64,000 bases of DNA from Guillardia theta CCMP2712. Taxonomy: Eukaryota > Protista > Cryptophyta. The position numbers were made by a program, and so were the translations under genes. Below, in pieces: positions 52,952-58,599 of this stretch (within the stretch, counting starts at the first letter, position 1; every line of letters begins with the position of its first letter). The notes beneath the pieces are model-generated. The model worked only from the letters and a program-made list of their open reading frames with translations, did no database searches and was not told the origin of the DNA. Location: NCBI RefSeq assembly GCF_000315625.1, contig NW_005434608.1, forward strand, positions 185,353 through 249,352, given 5' to 3'.

Positions 52952-53239
52952 GTTGCCGCTATCAGAAATTGGAATGCACAAACAGCTCCAACGCTCTGCA
53001 TGCCCAGGTGTGAAGCAGCGTCGTACGTGAGACCTAGTCGCTTTCCACTGTTCCTCTTCGACACCTCAGCGCATGGTCTTCCTATCCTCCTGACTTCTTC
53101 CCTCCCAACCCTCATCATGCAAGTACTATTCTCTATCCTACCAACCTGAAACAAACCCTCATGTTTCTACAACCAGCCCTCAATGTCCTACGCTCTCCTG
53201 CTCCTCCTGATCTTACTCCGTCTTTCCTTTGTCCCCCTC

Positions 53240-53455
<216 letters not shown>

Positions 53456-53478
53456 GGAGTCATCCCCTCCACTTTCCC

Positions 53479-53940
53479 NNNNNNNNNNNNNNNNNNNNNN
53501 NNNNNNNNNNNNNNNNNNNNNNNNNNNNNNNNNNNNNNNNNNNNNNNNNNNNNNNNNNNNNNNNNNNNNNNNNNNNNNNNNNNNNNNNNNNNNNNNNNNN
53601 NNNNNNNNNNNNNNNNNNNNNNNNNNNNNNNNNNNNNNNNNNNNNNNNNNNNNNNNNNNNNNNNNNNNNNNNNNNNNNNNNNNNNNNNNNNNNNNNNNNN
53701 NNNNNNNNNNNNNNNNNNNNNNNNNNNNNNNNNNNNNNNNNNNNNNNNNNNNNNNNNNNNNNNNNNNNNNNNNNNNNNNNNNNNNNNNNNNNNNNNNNNN
53801 NNNNNNNNNNNNNNNNNNNNNNNNNNNNNNNNNNNNNNNNNNNNNNNNNNNNNNNNNNNNNNNNNNNNNNNNNNNNNNNNNNNNNNNNNNNNNNNNNNNN
53901 NNNNNNNNNNNNNNNNNNNNNNNNNNNNNNNNNNNNNNNN
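53479..53940. other. Assembly gap
   Basis: Run of n. Confidence 0.99.
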
Positions 53941-54352
53941 GGAGCAGGACGAGCAGGAGAAGGCGGAGGAGCAGGAGGAGCAGGAGGAGCAGGAGGAGCA
54001 GGAGCAGGAGCAGGAGCAGGAGGAGCAGGAGGAGCAGGAGCAGCATGAGCTAATTTAGAAGTACCAGGACATGGATGGACTGAGAGCAAAGAAAGATCAA
54101 GGGTGGATAGAGAGGAGGAGGTCAATTTTACGAGACTGGATACAGAGTAAGAAAGGACTTCATTGTAGCACATATAATGCCAATGTTGTTAAACATCTTT
54201 GATGTCGAGGAGCTCGTGAAAGCGTCTTCTTCTGTCATGTTGAGCGCATGCGAACCTTGGCGAGTCCAACACGCACCCTGCAACCCCCGAATCGCTGCAT
54301 CATCCTGACCTCTTGCCAGTTGCAGGTTGAAGCTCGTGTGGACCGGGTGGCC

Positions 54353-57300
54353 ATGTTATCTTCGGTTCGCATGTCCATCGCTTCAAGGCTGCACTTAGCG
54401 AACATAGTAGCGCCATGCATACCCTGCTTCTGGAAAATCTCAAGCCATGGTGCTTGCGCTCCATCCCTCACGGCTCTCCCTTCCTTGAGGCAGATGTCAA
54501 GGGCGTCATCTGCCAGAAACAGTAGCCATGCCAGTGACCCTGAGGCTTCAGGCGATTCTGCAAGTGGAAGGAGCAGTCAAGGGAAGACAATGAACTTGTG
54601 GCAGGCAAGAAAACAGCTCAGTGAACTTAGGAAGAGGAAGAAGGAGATGAAGATGGAGGACGAGATGGTCTGCGGGCCTTCCCACTCGGCGATGCAGCAT
54701 CCTGTCTTCATCAAGGCGGTGGTAGAGCAGAGTCTTCGCAGCATGCTGCAGCTGAGGTCCCAAGAGAAGAAGATGCGAATTCAGCTGGACTTGGAGCAGC
54801 TGGGGATGCAGTACCTCCGTGAAGTGCTCGAGACAAATTTCCCCATCTCGGCGCTGCCCTACAAGCTCAAGGTGAACCAGATCGGCTTCGAGAAGACCAA
54901 CGTCAAGCTGCGAAAGTGCGTGGGTACCCTCACCGACGAAAAGTCGATCCAGGTGCTCCGGAAGTTGCTGGTGGGCTCAAATGGATACTCGCCCACTTTC
55001 GAGATCGAGATAGCTCTTGAAGATGATGTCAACGTGTTCCAGTACTCCGAGGACGTTGTGAAGATGAAGCGGCTGGCGGAGCAATCGACCCACTACTGCA
55101 TGATCTCCTTCTACAGCTTCACCCCCATCGCTCACCCCGACCTGGTCGTCGAGGAATACCTGAGAGACTGGGAGCCTGTCGGGATCCTCGGGCGTACCTA
55201 CGTGGCTAAGGAGGGAGTCAACGCTCAGCTGGCTGTGCCTTGCGAGGTGGTGGGTTGGTTGGAGTCCTATGTCCAGCAGAGGCCCGAGCTGCAGGGACAG
55301 GCAGTTCTGAATCGCGACCCTGTGCTTGTGCGCAAGGAGGAAGAAGGGACAAACGCTCCCTTCGAGAGTCTGCACGTGAGGACACGACCGTACGTGCTGA
55401 TGGACGGGATGGAGCGCAAACTAGAGTGGACGGACGCTGGGGAGGAGCTCTCCCCTAAGGAGTGGCACGAGAAGCTGAAAGAGGCGGCGGCGGGGAAGGG
55501 GTCGAACGGGAAGGAGGTGGTGATCTTGGACTGCAGGAACACCTACGAAAGCGACTTGGGGAGGTTCGATGGGGCGGTCCCTCTCAATACAATCAAGTTC
55601 AGCGAATCCTGGAATGTCATTGAGAGCCAACTACAGGGCCGTCAGCCTGACAAGACAGGTGCCTTGCCTCCCCCCTCTCCCCCTCCCTGCCTCCTGCCTC
55701 CTGCCTCCTCGACCCTCCTGCCTCCTGCCTCGTCCTGCTCCCTGCTGCGGGTCCAAATCTTGTTGTTCTGTCCGCACATGCTTTCTCCTTCTTTCTCCGC
55801 CCTTTCCTTTCAAACTCCCGGCTCCTCCTCGCAAAATAGTGATCCATCGCGCTCCTCCTCCTCAGCTGACCTGACCTCCCTTGCGACAGAGGTCATGATC
55901 TATTGCACTGGAGGCATCCGTTGCGTGAAGGTGGGCGCGTACCTAAAGCAGAACATGGGCTTCAAGGATGTGAAGAGACTGCGAGGAGGGATCGTGAGCT
56001 ACCTCCGAGACCTCAACGAGACGTGCGGAGGAGACGAGAGGGAGATGGAGAAGGCCTCCTTGTTCAAGGGCATCAACTATGTCTTCGACGGGAGGGTCGG
56101 CCAGCTTGTCACCCGGGATATTCCGATCGACCGCATGCCAAACTCCACAGGGGAGCCACTGTTGAAGGATCAGGACGGAAACCTCATCCCAGTGTCCGGG
56201 CCCGAGGTACCGGACCAGTACGACAGGTGCAGGAAGATCCGGGAGTGCGTCTCAGCGGCGTTCGCCTCGAGGTTTGGGGAGGCAGCGAAGAGGCCAGAGG
56301 AGGACGAGAACGGCAGCTCTCTCGCTGAGACGAGCCCAGCACATGAAGAGCAGCCAGCGGGAGGTAGCGAGCAGGTCGAGCTGACAAACGAGTCCGCGAG
56401 AGCCGAGGCGTTTTGCGCCTACTTCTCGCAGTCGTATCTGCGGGAAGCCGAGCTCTTGCAGGAGCTGACGGAGGAAACAAGGAAATCCTTCCCTGTTGTC
56501 CATCACATGTGCTCCGGCCCGTTGCAGGTTCGGTGGGAGAGAGGGCGGGTTGGCGGCTGACTGTTGCGAGCAGGGGAGCTTCCTCACCTTCCTCTGTGAG
56601 CTGTCTCGGGCACGGAGGGTGCTGGAGGTCGGCTGCTTCACCGGCTACACCACCATGTGCTTGGCCAGCAGCAGGGACGTCGAGGCTGTCATCTCCATCG
56701 ATCGAGATTCCAAGACTTCGAAAGTGGCAAGGAGCTTCTTCGAGAGGTCGAAGTTCGGCCACAAGATCCAGCTGAGGGTGGGAGACTCCCAAGCGATCCT
56801 GACTGAGCTTGTGGAGGAGAAGCAAAAGCCCTTCGACCTGGTCTACCTCGATGCCGCTAAGCGCAGCTACCTCGAGCAGGTGGAGGAGGAGGAGGAAGCG
56901 GGGGGGGGGGTGAGAGGGAGGAGGAAAGGGTTGGGTGCTAAGGGGAACGGGAATGCTGAGTGAAACGAGGATCATTCCTACCGTGGACTTGACCCTGCGC
57001 TGTCGCAGAGGAACTTCCTACTGGAGCACGGGCTCATCCCGGTGGGAGGTCTTGTGCTGGCTGACAACATCCTGTGGCGAGGAAGCACGATCGATGAGCA
57101 TGACAAGGTCCTCCAGTCCGGAGAGAGGAAGGTGCCGGAGACCAGAGATGACAAGGTTGCCCTGCTTGCCTCCTCGCTGCTCCTGAGTAGTTCCAACAGA
57201 TCGTCGCTGCCATGCTCGACTACGTTCAGAGCGGGAGTACAAGCGCGCAGGTGAGGCTGGAGTGAGCAGGATCAGGGGGTGACGTGTGGTTGCAGTTCGA

Positions 57301-57355
57301 GCAGGTGGTGGTTCCCTTCCGAGATGGCATCAGCATAGTTAGGAGAATAGCGTGA
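54353..57355 (+). CDS. Fusion of a TrhO/YceA-type rhodanese-domain tRNA U34 hydroxylase and a class-I SAM/cation-dependent O-methyltransferase (5' end uncertain)
   Basis: TrhO motifs: SFYSFTPI, GILGRTYVAKEGVNAQLA, FESLHVRTR, GEELSPKEWHE, ILDCRNTYESDLGRFDGAV, MIYCTGGIRCVKVGAYLK, VKRLRGGIVSY, FKGINYVFDGRV. OMT motifs: LLQELTEET, MCSGPLQ|GSFLTFL, RVLEVGCFTGYTTMCLA, FDLVYLDAAKRSY, GGLVLADNILWRG, VVVPFRDGISIVRR*. Introns include 55659-55889 and 56528-56573. Confidence 0.9.
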
Positions 57356-57596
57356 GATGCTCTATTAGCAATGAAAACTTGTTGACCATGATGACATCAG
57401 CAGTCCTCATCATTCAAAAAATTGTTTATGAAGATTCACACCAGTGCTCCTATATCACAAAAACTTGACCACCGTCGAAGCTTCCTTTCTGTCGCATATA
57501 CAAGCAGGCCCGTGGGCGAGGGAGAAGAAGATAGAAAAAAACGAGGAAGAGGAGGACGAGGAATAGGAGGACGAGGACGAAGACGAGGCCTGAAAC

Positions 57597-58190
57597 TTAA
57601 TCACTGTCCTCCCTCTCGTAGATCACTGCAGTGCTGTAAAGCCCACGAGGAGGAGGCAGAACCGGGTGCGACGGATCGAACGTCTCGAACCCAGGATGGA
57701 ACTTCCCGTCTACGGTGGAGCCGATAAAAGGCATGAAGACGGACCTGCTCCCGCACGGTTTCTTCTGCGACTTGAAGGAGCTCGTGCTCTTTACCCGTAG
57801 AGCATCCTGCATCCTAGAGCACACGTTCTCGACCCTCGAGCCAACAAACTCTGCAAGCACATTGGCTGCGGAGTATGAGAACATCTCCCTGGGTATGGAG
57901 GACACGTCGTCGGATGTCGTGTCGTCGGAGGAGTAGCAGTCGTCCGAGAGCTCCACCATCTCCTGGTTCAGCATCTCATCCGTCCTCTTACACACTTTCA
58001 ACAATGTCGAGTATGCCTCCAGCAGGAAGCTGCCAGTCTCCTGCTCTGCGCACTCCTTCGGATGCGGTCTAGCTCTTCTCATTGCCCTGCTGCTATTTAC
58101 GTTCCCTGCTTCTGCTCCATAGTAATGTAGATTTTCTCTCAAAGATTTGCTCGTTTGCCTTGATATGAGGTTGCTGGGTCTGTACACCAT
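57597..58190 (-). CDS. Hypothetical single-exon protein
   Basis: Clean ORF of about 197 aa from the first ATG (MVYRPSNL...) with coding-like codon usage. No family recognised. Confidence 0.55.
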   Translation of the reverse strand: MVYRPSNLISRQTSKSLRENLHYYGAEAGNVNSSRAMRRARPHPKECAEQETGSFLLEAYSTLLKVCKRTDEMLNQEMVELSDDCYSSDDTTSDDVSSIPREMFSYSAANVLAEFVGSRVENVCSRMQDALRVKSTSSFKSQKKPCGSRSVFMPFIGSTVDGKFHPGFETFDPSHPVLPPPRGLYSTAVIYEREDSD

Positions 58191-58599
58191 GATGCCGGAA
58201 TCTCCGTCCACGATTCAAATTATACCAATAATTTCGTTTTCTTTGACAGAATTATCTGAGGTTGAGCTTGAAATATTTGCTGGAAGTCGCCGCGAGACGT
58301 TCCTACGAGCTTGTGTCCTGAACCTTCTTCAATCGAAGCCAACAATCCAGCTCTTATTCCCCCCCTTCGAACCAAACTTGTTCTTGACTCACTGTCTGTC
58401 TGTCTTCCTCTCTGTCACTCTATCTATGTTCCTCTCTCTCCCTCAAGCTCTCTTCCCCTTCCTGGTTGACCTCCTGTCTTCTTGTTTCCTGTCGTCACGC
58501 CTTTCCCTCCGATCCTGGTTCCCACCCCACCCTCGTCCATCCAGCTCGGTCTGTAGTAAAATACAACAAAACACAACACCACCCCTCAAAAAATACCCC

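What the first reader, a model, noticed from the sequence alone, without database searches (positions are those of the whole stretch)
54353..57355. TrhO hydroxylase fused to an O-methyltransferase: a candidate one-protein 5-methoxyuridine (mo5U34) pathway in a eukaryote
Seen: the end of the TrhO/YceA rhodanese domain (YCTGGIRC...GINYVFDGRV) and the first helices of a CCoAOMT/COMT-family methyltransferase (AEAFCAYFS...LLQELTEETRKSFPVVHHMCSGPLQ) lie in the same exon and frame. The fusion therefore does not depend on a splice guess. The OMT keeps the SAM motif (LEVGCFTGY) and the cation-binding DAxK and DN motifs. Established: bacterial TrhO makes 5-hydroxyuridine at tRNA position 34 using O2, and Bacillus TrmR (YrrM), a member of this O-methyltransferase family, methylates ho5U to mo5U, which widens wobble decoding. 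Inference: the two consecutive steps are joined in one nucleus-encoded algal enzyme, most plausibly acting on organellar tRNAs. I am not aware of an xo5U pathway characterised in eukaryotes.
Basis: partly seen in the sequence, partly recalled or inferred. Interest (0 to 1): 0.88.

Follow-up and report, generated by a model that had tools for sequence, protein, structure and literature searches.

The report
TrhO–O-methyltransferase fusion gene, cryptophyte copy
This is a real, expressed cryptophyte gene that joins a tRNA uridine-34 hydroxylase (TrhO) to an O-methyltransferase and probably makes 5-methoxyuridine in organelle tRNAs, but the same fusion was already reported in oomycetes and a diatom in 2019, so this is a new member of a known kind.

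Summary
A six-exon gene (54353-57355, + strand) encodes an 835-aa protein. Transcript contigs from three studies span it with all five GT..AG introns removed, so TrhO and the methyltransferase sit on one mRNA. Exon 2 carries both the TrhO active-site loop (CTGGIR) and the first helices of the methyltransferase. One splice guess needed correcting: intron 4 is 44 nt.

The novelty claim does not hold. Sakai et al. 2019 reported yceA-trmR fusions in Phytophthora and Phaeodactylum and used them to find TrhO. About 97 of the 120 best database hits carry both parts (diatoms, red algae, Vitrella, Eimeria).

New here:
- The genome has a second, divergent fusion paralogue on another contig. It has a classic cryptophyte plastid leader; the window copy has a mitochondrial-like one.
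- A PB1-like beta-grasp domain sits before TrhO and is found only on such proteins.
- The methyltransferase is not a Firmicute TrmR orthologue. It belongs to a "P-x-R-D-G" clade that co-occurs with TrhO in Bacteroidota.

The function (mo5U34 in organelle tRNA) remains inferred. Moderate interest.

The parts
54353..55658 (+). Exon 1. It holds the start codon, the N-terminal leader (aa 1 to about 75), a helix plus the beta-grasp domain (aa about 82-226), the UPF0176_N domain (aa 248-346) and the first half of the rhodanese domain.
   Evidence: ORF; Pfam UPF0176_N 62.3 bits; NCBIfam TrhO NF001133 88.1 bits; spliced contigs.
54353..54577 (+). Leader MLSSVRMSIASRLHLANIVAPCIPCFW..., Ser/Arg/Ala-rich, with no acidic residue before position 62 and only a weak hydrophobic core. 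It looks like a mitochondrial presequence.
   Evidence: Composition and Kyte-Doolittle hydropathy (KD) scan. It is conserved in the Hanusia phi orthologue P0002, which also starts at this Met. Heuristic only; no targeting predictor was available.
54692..55030 (+). N-terminal beta-grasp (PB1-like) domain, specific to eukaryote-type TrhO proteins.
   Evidence: jackhmmer finds it in nearly all of the fusions searched. AF2 model pLDDT 87.8. VIA Z 9.8, rmsd 2.2 over 82 aa to the MEKK PB1 domain 2o2v_B. No Pfam family at threshold. 185 clusters in 1.84 billion representatives; 51 of 53 longer ones carry UPF0176_N.
55659..55889 (+). Intron 1, 231 nt, GT..AG. It is in frame and open, which is why the genomic ORF reads through it.
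   Evidence: Joint in contigs of X1, X4 and X6.
55890..56527 (+). Exon 2. It holds the rhodanese active-site loop, the end of TrhO, an acidic linker and the first helices of the O-methyltransferase. This is the exon that proves the fusion.
   Evidence: NF001133 60.9 bits on aa 1-70 of the exon; PDB 9j5o and 4f67; BLAST of the model to P0004 starts at aa 613 inside this exon.
55904..55921 (+). CTGGIR catalytic loop of TrhO.
   Evidence: Read from the sequence. C200, T201, G203 and R205 of this loop are essential in E. coli TrhO (PMC6599085).
56528..56573 (+). Intron 2, 46 nt, GT..AG.
56574..56879 (+). Exon 3. This is the methyltransferase core, with the SAM motif LEVGCFTGY (56622-56648) and DAAK (56850-56861; metal-binding Asp and catalytic Lys).
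   Evidence: Pfam Methyltransf_3 85.6 bits; PDB hits; alignment with TrmR D133 and K136.
56880..57008 (+). Intron 3, 129 nt, GT..AG.
57009..57155 (+). Exon 4, with the ADN metal ligands (57060-57068).
   Evidence: Pfam Methyltransf_3 positions 143-170; alignment with TrmR D159 and N160.
57156..57199 (+). Intron 4, 44 nt, GT..AG.
   Evidence: This corrects my first model.
57200..57250 (+). Exon 5.
57251..57295 (+). Intron 5, 45 nt, GT..AG.
57296..57355 (+). Exon 6, with the clade-specific P-F-R-D-G motif (57314-57328) and the stop codon (57353-57355).

Best explanation
The locus is a nuclear cryptophyte gene (the nearest relative found is Hanusia phi) for a three-domain enzyme: an organelle-targeting leader, a PB1-like beta-grasp domain, a TrhO tRNA uridine-34 hydroxylase and a cation-dependent class I O-methyltransferase.

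Shown: one spliced mRNA encodes all of it, and the catalytic motifs of both enzymes are intact.

Inferred: the TrhO half uses O2 to turn U34 into 5-hydroxyuridine on tRNAs that read four-codon boxes. The methyltransferase half then uses SAM and a bound divalent cation to methylate the 5-hydroxyl, giving 5-methoxyuridine (mo5U34), without releasing the tRNA. The substrates are organelle-encoded, bacterial-type tRNAs. This copy probably works in the mitochondrion, and the divergent paralogue on contig C31, which has a signal peptide followed by Phe, works in the plastid. The beta-grasp domain probably helps bind tRNA or a partner protein.
For: - Single spliced transcript in three studies.
- TrhO membership: Pfam and NCBIfam hits, only TrhO structures hit in the PDB, and the CTGGIR loop whose residues are essential in E. 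coli.
- The methyltransferase keeps the SAM motif, the Asp/Asp/Asn metal ligands and the catalytic Lys.
- The two domains are fused in about 97 of the 120 best hits, across diatoms, Triparma, red algae, Vitrella, Eimeria and Chrysophaeum. Sakai 2019 reports the fusion in Phytophthora and Phaeodactylum. Such conserved fusions usually join consecutive steps.
- The nearest standalone relatives are ~213-aa Bacteroidota OMTs. In 151 Bacteroidota genomes this OMT type and TrhO co-occur: 53 have both, 13 only the OMT, 21 only TrhO, 64 neither; odds ratio 12.4.
- The fusions and these OMTs share P-x-R-D-G. SynOMT, SafC and TrmR have Gly or Ala at that position.
- Targeting: the paralogue has the leader ...LLALSLLGSVLA|FAP, while the window copy has a basic, acid-free leader.
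Against: - No biochemical or mass-spectrometric data exist for any eukaryotic fusion.
- The methyltransferase is only 21% identical to TrmR. In PDB ranking it is closer to SynOMT-like and COMTD1-like enzymes, some of which methylate small catechols in vitro.
- Of the three Arg residues that Ryu 2018 uses to define TrmR, only R86 is clearly kept.
- The window copy lacks the Cys-rich Rhodanese_C domain present in E. coli TrhO and in most fusions.
- Chloroplasts and mitochondria are generally thought to read family boxes with unmodified U34 (PMC11571807).
- The compartment assignment rests on hand heuristics. The leader has a moderately hydrophobic stretch and a conserved Phe, so plastid or periplastid targeting is not excluded.
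- The co-occurrence test is not corrected for phylogeny.
Confidence: 0.6

Rival explanations
1. The methyltransferase half acts on a small-molecule catechol or another hydroxylated metabolite, as SynOMT, SafC and CCoAOMT do. The fusion to TrhO would then reflect something other than consecutive steps on tRNA, such as shared regulation, or a rhodanese role in sulfur or redox chemistry.
For: The fusion OMT profile scores 165-175 bits against SynOMT (3cbg), the Coxiella OMT (3tr6) and SafC (5lhm), but only 100 bits against TrmR. Identity to TrmR is 21%. No TrhO gene lies next to the Sporocytophaga OMT.
Against: The fusion is conserved across very distant eukaryotes. The OMT clade co-occurs with TrhO in Bacteroidota. 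The clade has its own P-x-R-D-G signature, which is absent from the small-molecule OMTs examined. The physiological substrates of SynOMT-like enzymes are themselves unknown.
Confidence: 0.15
2. The enzyme does make xo5U-type marks, but on cytosolic tRNA, rRNA or another RNA rather than on organellar tRNA. Alternatively, the window copy goes to the plastid or periplastidial compartment rather than the mitochondrion.
For: The transcript contigs stay open upstream of the first ATG, and X4 carries 10 unmatched bases at its 5' end, so an upstream exon cannot be fully excluded. The leader has a semi-hydrophobic stretch and a conserved Phe26. Phytophthora lacks a plastid, and Eimeria mitochondria are said to encode no tRNAs (background knowledge), so no single organelle explains all the taxa.
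Against: Hanusia P0002 begins at the same Met. The leader is acid-free and basic for 61 residues. The paralogue already carries the canonical plastid signal. Cytosolic U34 in family boxes is normally modified by the Elongator pathway (background knowledge).
Confidence: 0.2
3. The fusion is a gene-model artefact, and two neighbouring genes are really transcribed separately.
For: None found. The only public relatives from Hanusia are split models (P0001, P0002), but they split at a retained intron.
Against: One contig per run in three studies crosses every junction. Both domains share exon 2 in one frame.
Confidence: 0.02

Closest known systems
yceA(trhO)-trmR fusion genes of Phytophthora sojae, P. 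ramorum and Phaeodactylum tricornutum (Sakai et al. 2019, Nat Commun 10:2858)
   Same: Same architecture, with a TrhO hydroxylase followed by a Methyltransf_3 O-methyltransferase in one polypeptide. The diatom proteins are 40-45% identical over TrhO and share the N-terminal beta-grasp domain.
   Different: This is a cryptophyte copy. It lacks the Cys-rich Rhodanese_C domain, and it is one of two divergent paralogues in its genome. The 2019 paper only noted the fusion (calling the organisms bacteria) and did not analyse it.
E. coli TrhO (YceA) and B. subtilis YbfQ; structures 9j5o and 4f67
   Same: UPF0176_N plus a rhodanese domain with the CTGGIR loop. The chemistry is presumably the same: O2-dependent formation of ho5U34.
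   Different: The window protein adds a leader, a beta-grasp domain and a fused methyltransferase. It has no Rhodanese_C zinc-ribbon-like region and carries a 77-codon in-frame intron.
B. subtilis TrmR (YrrM), the tRNA ho5U34 methyltransferase (Ryu et al. 2018; 5ZW3, 5ZW4)
   Same: Same Pfam family (PF01596), the same Mg ligands (D133, D159, N160) and the same Lys. The proposed reaction is the same.
   Different: Only 21% identical. R90 is not kept and the R178 region cannot be aligned. The C-terminal motif is PFRDG rather than PVGDG. Ryu et al. restrict the TrmR orthogroup to Firmicutes.
~213-aa Bacteroidota O-methyltransferases (for example Larkinella and Sporocytophaga), automatically named YrrM or caffeoyl-CoA OMT
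   Same: They are the closest standalone relatives (33-37% identity, 124-155 bits), they share the P-x-R-D-G motif, and they co-occur with TrhO.
   Different: They are not fused and have no leader. None has been characterised.
PB1 domains (MEKK2/3, NBR1, Par6)
   Same: The N-terminal domain has the same beta-grasp fold (Z 8-9.8).
   Different: There is no significant sequence match (Pfam PB1 E 0.027 in the paralogue only). It is always attached to TrhO, and no evidence points to PB1-type head-to-tail pairing.

Membership tests
TrhO / UPF0176 (tRNA uridine-34 hydroxylase) | N-terminal acylphosphatase-like UPF0176_N domain | tested here: met
   PF17773, 62.3 bits against a cut-off of 26.2.
TrhO / UPF0176 (tRNA uridine-34 hydroxylase) | Rhodanese domain with the CXGGXR loop; C200, T201, G203 and R205 are essential in E. 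coli | tested here: met
   YCTGGIRC at 55901-55924; residue requirements from PMC6599085.
TrhO / UPF0176 (tRNA uridine-34 hydroxylase) | NCBIfam equivalog NF001133 over its 170-bit cut-off | tested here: inconclusive
   The two exon pieces score 88.1 and 60.9 bits separately. The spliced protein could not be submitted by reference. Full-length homologues P0004 and P0037 score 185 and 202 bits.
TrhO / UPF0176 (tRNA uridine-34 hydroxylase) | C-terminal Cys-rich Rhodanese_C domain (PF12368) | tested here: not met
   There is no hit in the window ORF, and the region has no Cys cluster. The domain is present in the paralogue and in most fusions. It is not known to be required for activity.
TrhO / UPF0176 (tRNA uridine-34 hydroxylase) | O2-dependent ho5U34 formation on tRNA | not testable with these tools
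   Needs biochemistry or mass spectrometry.
Methyltransf_3 (cation-dependent class I O-methyltransferases) | Rossmann SAM motif, Asp/Asp/Asn metal ligands and catalytic Lys | tested here: met
   PF01596, 85.6 bits. LEVGCFTGY, LDAAK and ADN align with TrmR D133, K136, D159 and N160.
TrmR orthogroup (Firmicute ho5U34 methyltransferase, Ryu 2018) | At least ~40% identity to B. subtilis TrmR, and TrmR as the closest characterised relative | tested here: not met
   20.7% identity, 64.7 bits. TrmR (5zw3, 8k1f) ranks 42nd-43rd among PDB hits, at 100 bits against 175 for the top hit.
TrmR orthogroup (Firmicute ho5U34 methyltransferase, Ryu 2018) | tRNA-binding Arg86, Arg90 and Arg178 | tested here: inconclusive
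   R86 is kept (IDRDSK). R90 is Thr, with Lys at position 89. The R178 region is an insertion with scattered Arg/Lys and cannot be aligned. Many other fusions have Arg at position 90 and an Arg-rich helix at position 178.
P-x-R-D-G clade of OMTs (fusions plus Bacteroidota ~213-aa OMTs; defined here) | Arg in the C-terminal P-x-R-D-G motif, and best match to the fusion profile | tested here: met
   PFRDG at 57314-57328. Arg is present in 82 of 92 fusions and in 117 of the 120 nearest standalone OMTs. It is absent from SynOMT, SafC, the Coxiella, Legionella and Leptospira OMTs, and TrmR.
PB1 domain | Pfam PB1 match, and the acidic OPCA or basic-cluster interaction motifs | tested here: not met
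   There is no Pfam PB1 hit for the window domain, and a sub-threshold one (E 0.027) in the paralogue. Only the fold is similar. The interaction motifs were not examined.

The most novel reading that the evidence does not exclude
The P-x-R-D-G O-methyltransferases (the fused eukaryotic domains plus the ~213-aa Bacteroidota enzymes) are a second family of tRNA ho5U34 methyltransferases, separate from Firmicute TrmR. Cryptophytes run two compartment-specific TrhO-OMT enzymes, one in the plastid and one in the mitochondrion, each carrying a previously undescribed PB1-like domain. If so, mo5U34, rather than unmodified-U 'superwobble', reads family boxes in the organelles of many algae, oomycetes and some apicomplexans.
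Probability: 0.4. Interest if true: 0.7.

Novelty: new member of a known kind. Interest (0 to 1): 0.45.

Why it matters
xo5U-type wobble marks are regarded as bacterial, and organelles are thought to read four-codon boxes with unmodified U34. A conserved, expressed, organelle-targeted hydroxylase-methyltransferase in many algal, oomycete and apicomplexan lineages suggests that this view is incomplete. It also offers a one-protein route to mo5U that could be tested directly in E. coli. The presence of the fusion in Eimeria and Phytophthora, and its absence as a fusion in animals, could make it of interest as a parasite- or pathogen-specific translation factor. The point was already raised in 2019. 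What this locus adds is a cryptophyte with two differently targeted paralogues, a new accessory domain, and a pointer to an uncharacterised bacterial OMT clade.

Tried and rejected
- My first splice models for intron 4 (35 or 59 nt) were wrong. The contigs show 44 nt.
- Raw RNA reads of X19 gave almost no depth on the gene. They pile up at about 57312-57743 on the neighbouring minus-strand gene, with a T-run loose end at 57410, so they say nothing about the strand or expression level of this gene.
- NCBIfam has no model that recognises the OMT half as TrmR. Only generic methyltransferase hits appeared.
- The gene neighbourhood of the Sporocytophaga-type OMT shows no TrhO or other tRNA gene.
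- Foldseek gave only weak matches for the N-terminal domain (best E 1.4e-3). The fold call rests on VIA-align.
I used bit-score ranking against the PDB instead.
- The TrhO-core tree is poorly resolved apart from the window+P0003 pair. It gives no origin for either paralogue.
- The linker exons of the paralogue (L027 3768-4342) could not be modelled without RNA.
- No targeting predictor was available.
Full report
**What is in the sequence**

The + strand between 54248 and 56560 is one open frame. It carries a UPF0176_N domain (62.3 bits) and a rhodanese domain. The next frame, from 56496, carries Methyltransf_3 (85.6 bits). From the sequence I built a six-exon model. Contigs of public runs then confirmed or corrected each junction.

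Runs X1, X4 and X6 come from three different studies. Each holds one contig that covers 54318 to at least 57358 and skips 55659-55889 (231 nt), 56528-56573 (46 nt), 56880-57008 (129 nt), 57156-57199 (44 nt) and 57251-57295 (45 nt). All five skipped stretches are GT..AG. These runs are labelled only "RNA? (a guess)". However, contigs that lack all five canonical introns can only come from spliced RNA, and the likely genomic runs hold 0.96 of the words, introns included.

The final model is exons 54353-55658, 55890-56527, 56574-56879, 57009-57155, 57200-57250 and 57296-57355, giving 835 aa. My first guess for intron 4 was wrong and is corrected. The first intron is in frame and open, which explains the long genomic ORF.

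**The fusion itself**

Exon 2 encodes the TrhO active-site loop (YCTGGIRC), the end of the TrhO fold, an acidic linker and residues 613-648. Those last residues align with the first helices of the Methyltransf_3 domain of full-length homologues.

The TrhO pieces hit only the two solved TrhO structures, 9j5o and 4f67, and the NCBIfam TrhO equivalog. In E. coli, C200, T201, G203 and R205 of the CTGGIR loop are essential (PMC6599085), and all are present here. The methyltransferase keeps the SAM motif, the three metal ligands and the catalytic Lys. I checked this against a TrmR orthologue that I fetched from Bacillus spizizenii (L010:4607-5257:-), which is about 97% identical to PDB 5zw3.

**Organism and relatives**

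The genome is 87.1 Mb in 669 contigs. The best hits are two Hanusia phi models at 78% and 65% identity. Notes on the same genome mention a nucleomorph. The genome is therefore a cryptophyte, and its size suggests Guillardia theta (the species name is my inference).

Of the 120 best long hits, about 97 carry both TrhO and the methyltransferase. The named ones come from diatoms, Triparma, Chrysophaeum, red algae, Vitrella and Eimeria.

**Prior knowledge**

Sakai et al. [quoted passage not shown] The authors used that fusion as a clue, and they concluded that eukaryotic trhO homologues suggest xo5U-type modification in eukaryotes. JGI already labels such proteins [quoted passage not shown].

I found no paper that tests any eukaryotic fusion. 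Two mass-spectrometry surveys of palms list ho5U and name TrhO homologues. The fusion is therefore known, and its function in eukaryotes is untested.

**Is the methyltransferase a TrmR?**

By sequence, it is not. It is 20.7% identical to TrmR, against 33-35% to ~213-aa Bacteroidota OMTs and 35-38% to other fusion domains.

A profile of twelve fusion OMT domains (A1) scores as follows against the PDB:

| PDB target | Bits |
|---|---|
| Coxiella OMT, SynOMT, SafC | 165-175 |
| Human COMTD1 | 144 |
| Plant CCoAOMT | ~125 |
| TrmR (5zw3, 8k1f) | 100 |

Ryu et al. 2018 define TrmR orthologues by Arg86, Arg90 and Arg178, and find them only in Firmicutes. Here R86 is kept, R90 is Thr, and the R178 region cannot be aligned.

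What the fusion domains do share with their nearest standalone relatives is a C-terminal P-x-R-D-G motif. Arg is present in 82 of 92 fusions and in 117 of the 120 nearest standalone proteins. SynOMT, SafC, the Coxiella, Legionella and Leptospira OMTs, and TrmR all have Gly or Ala at that position.

**An independent functional link**

I sampled 151 genomes from one phylum, reached through a Kapaibacterium genome and taken to be Bacteroidota. The fusion-type OMT was counted as present at 135 bits or more to A1, and TrhO at scores over the NF001133 cut-off.

| | TrhO present | TrhO absent |
|---|---|---|
| Fusion-type OMT present | 53 | 13 |
| Fusion-type OMT absent | 21 | 64 |

The odds ratio is 12.4 (Fisher 6e-12). 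Thirteen of the 21 TrhO-only genomes have a weaker OMT of 85-115 bits. The test is not corrected for phylogeny or genome size, so it supports the link but does not prove it. Gene neighbourhoods gave nothing.

**A second paralogue**

The same genome has another TrhO-OMT gene at G000:C31, about 250.9-254.6 kb (L027 1881-5631). It has the beta-grasp domain, CTGGIRC, a Cys-rich Rhodanese_C region and a complete OMT with PVRDG.

Its N-terminus reads MLHRLNKCHVYFGLLALSLLGSVLA|FAPTQPW. This has a strongly hydrophobic core (Kyte-Doolittle hydropathy, KD, 2.38) followed by Phe, the pattern described for cryptophyte plastid stroma proteins (background knowledge). The window copy starts MLSSVRMSIASRLHL.... 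It has no acidic residue for 61 positions and only a weak hydrophobic core (KD 1.81), which looks like a mitochondrial presequence.

The two paralogues are 32% identical over the N-terminal 500 residues. They are not sisters in a TrhO-core tree: the window copy pairs with P0003 (SH-aLRT 97). The paralogue locus is held at 0.55-0.71 of words by the same transcript-like runs. That fits expression, but I could not lay reads on it.

Leaders of other taxa look mixed. Diatom and Triparma copies look mitochondrial, and red algal copies start M..SF(V/I)P, like rhodophyte transit peptides. All targeting calls here are heuristic.

**A third domain**

Residues ~114-226 form a domain found in nearly all of the fusions searched (alignment A2). 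The AlphaFold model is confident (pLDDT 87.8) and has a beta-grasp fold closest to PB1 domains (Z 9.8, rmsd 2.2 over 82 residues). Foldseek matches are weak, and Pfam has no family at threshold.

In 1.84 billion representatives, only 185 clusters match at E 1e-3 or better. Of the 53 longer ones, 51 carry UPF0176_N, and no other partner family appears beyond the methyltransferase models of the fusion itself. It is therefore an accessory domain specific to eukaryote-type TrhO. Its role is unknown; I suggest tRNA or partner binding.

**Mechanism and verdict**

The best reading is a bifunctional enzyme that hydroxylates and then methylates U34 of organellar tRNAs to give mo5U34 (confidence 0.6 for the whole statement; about 0.5 for the mitochondrial assignment).

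- Shown: the gene, its single transcript, intact catalytic motifs, the wide conservation of the fusion, and co-occurrence of the OMT clade with TrhO.
- Inferred: both activities, the substrate and the compartment.

The main rival is an OMT with a non-tRNA substrate.

The finding is genuine but not new in kind, so I score it as moderately interesting.

Noticed in passing
G000:C31:250880-254630 (L027 1881-5631, + strand): A second, divergent TrhO-OMT fusion gene in the same genome. It has a canonical cryptophyte signal-peptide-plus-Phe plastid leader, a Cys-rich Rhodanese_C region and introns of 41-271 nt. The linker exons are unresolved.
   Followed up: partly
G000:C2, about 108.2-109.2 kb (L002 1174-2106); G000:C15 (L001); G000:C50 (L026); G000:C334 (L025): The genome also encodes a standalone P-x-R-D-G-type OMT with no obvious leader, a SynOMT/COMTD1-like OMT, and two further TrhO-like loci. 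One of these carries YCTGGVRC. A further TrhO-plus-OMT pairing may therefore exist as separate proteins.
   Followed up: partly
window 57410-58211 (- strand): A convergent gene (204-aa ORF, no Pfam family) has its poly(A) site at about 57410, only ~55 nt past the stop codon of the fusion gene. In X1 and X6 a single contig runs on from the fusion gene across this neighbour, which fits overlapping or abutting 3' ends.
   Followed up: partly
window 53161-54050: A His-rich, low-complexity repeat runs into an assembly gap (a run of N) just upstream of the gene, so the promoter and any 5' exon are not fully assembled. Contig X4 has 10 unmatched bases before 54318.
   Followed up: no
P0001, P0002 (Hanusia phi, EukProt): The closest public relatives are split, intron-retaining models. 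The introns sit at the same positions as in the window. The Hanusia gene is probably also one fusion that has been mis-modelled.
   Followed up: partly
P0093 (Scytosiphon), P0100 (Tribonema), P0127-P0130 (Ectocarpus): Brown algae and Tribonema show long TrhO proteins without the OMT, and brown algae also have separate 400-433-aa P-x-R-D-G OMTs. This could be a secondary gene fission or an annotation error.
   Followed up: no
PMC6599085, section 'Alternative pathway for tRNA hydroxylation': The paper calls Phytophthora sojae, P. ramorum and Phaeodactylum tricornutum 'three bacterial species'. This may be why the eukaryotic fusion has stayed unnoticed.
   Followed up: yes
window 56528-56573, 57156-57199, 57251-57295: Three of the five introns are only 44-46 nt long. 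The paralogue has 41-54-nt introns too, so very short introns seem common in this genome.
   Followed up: no
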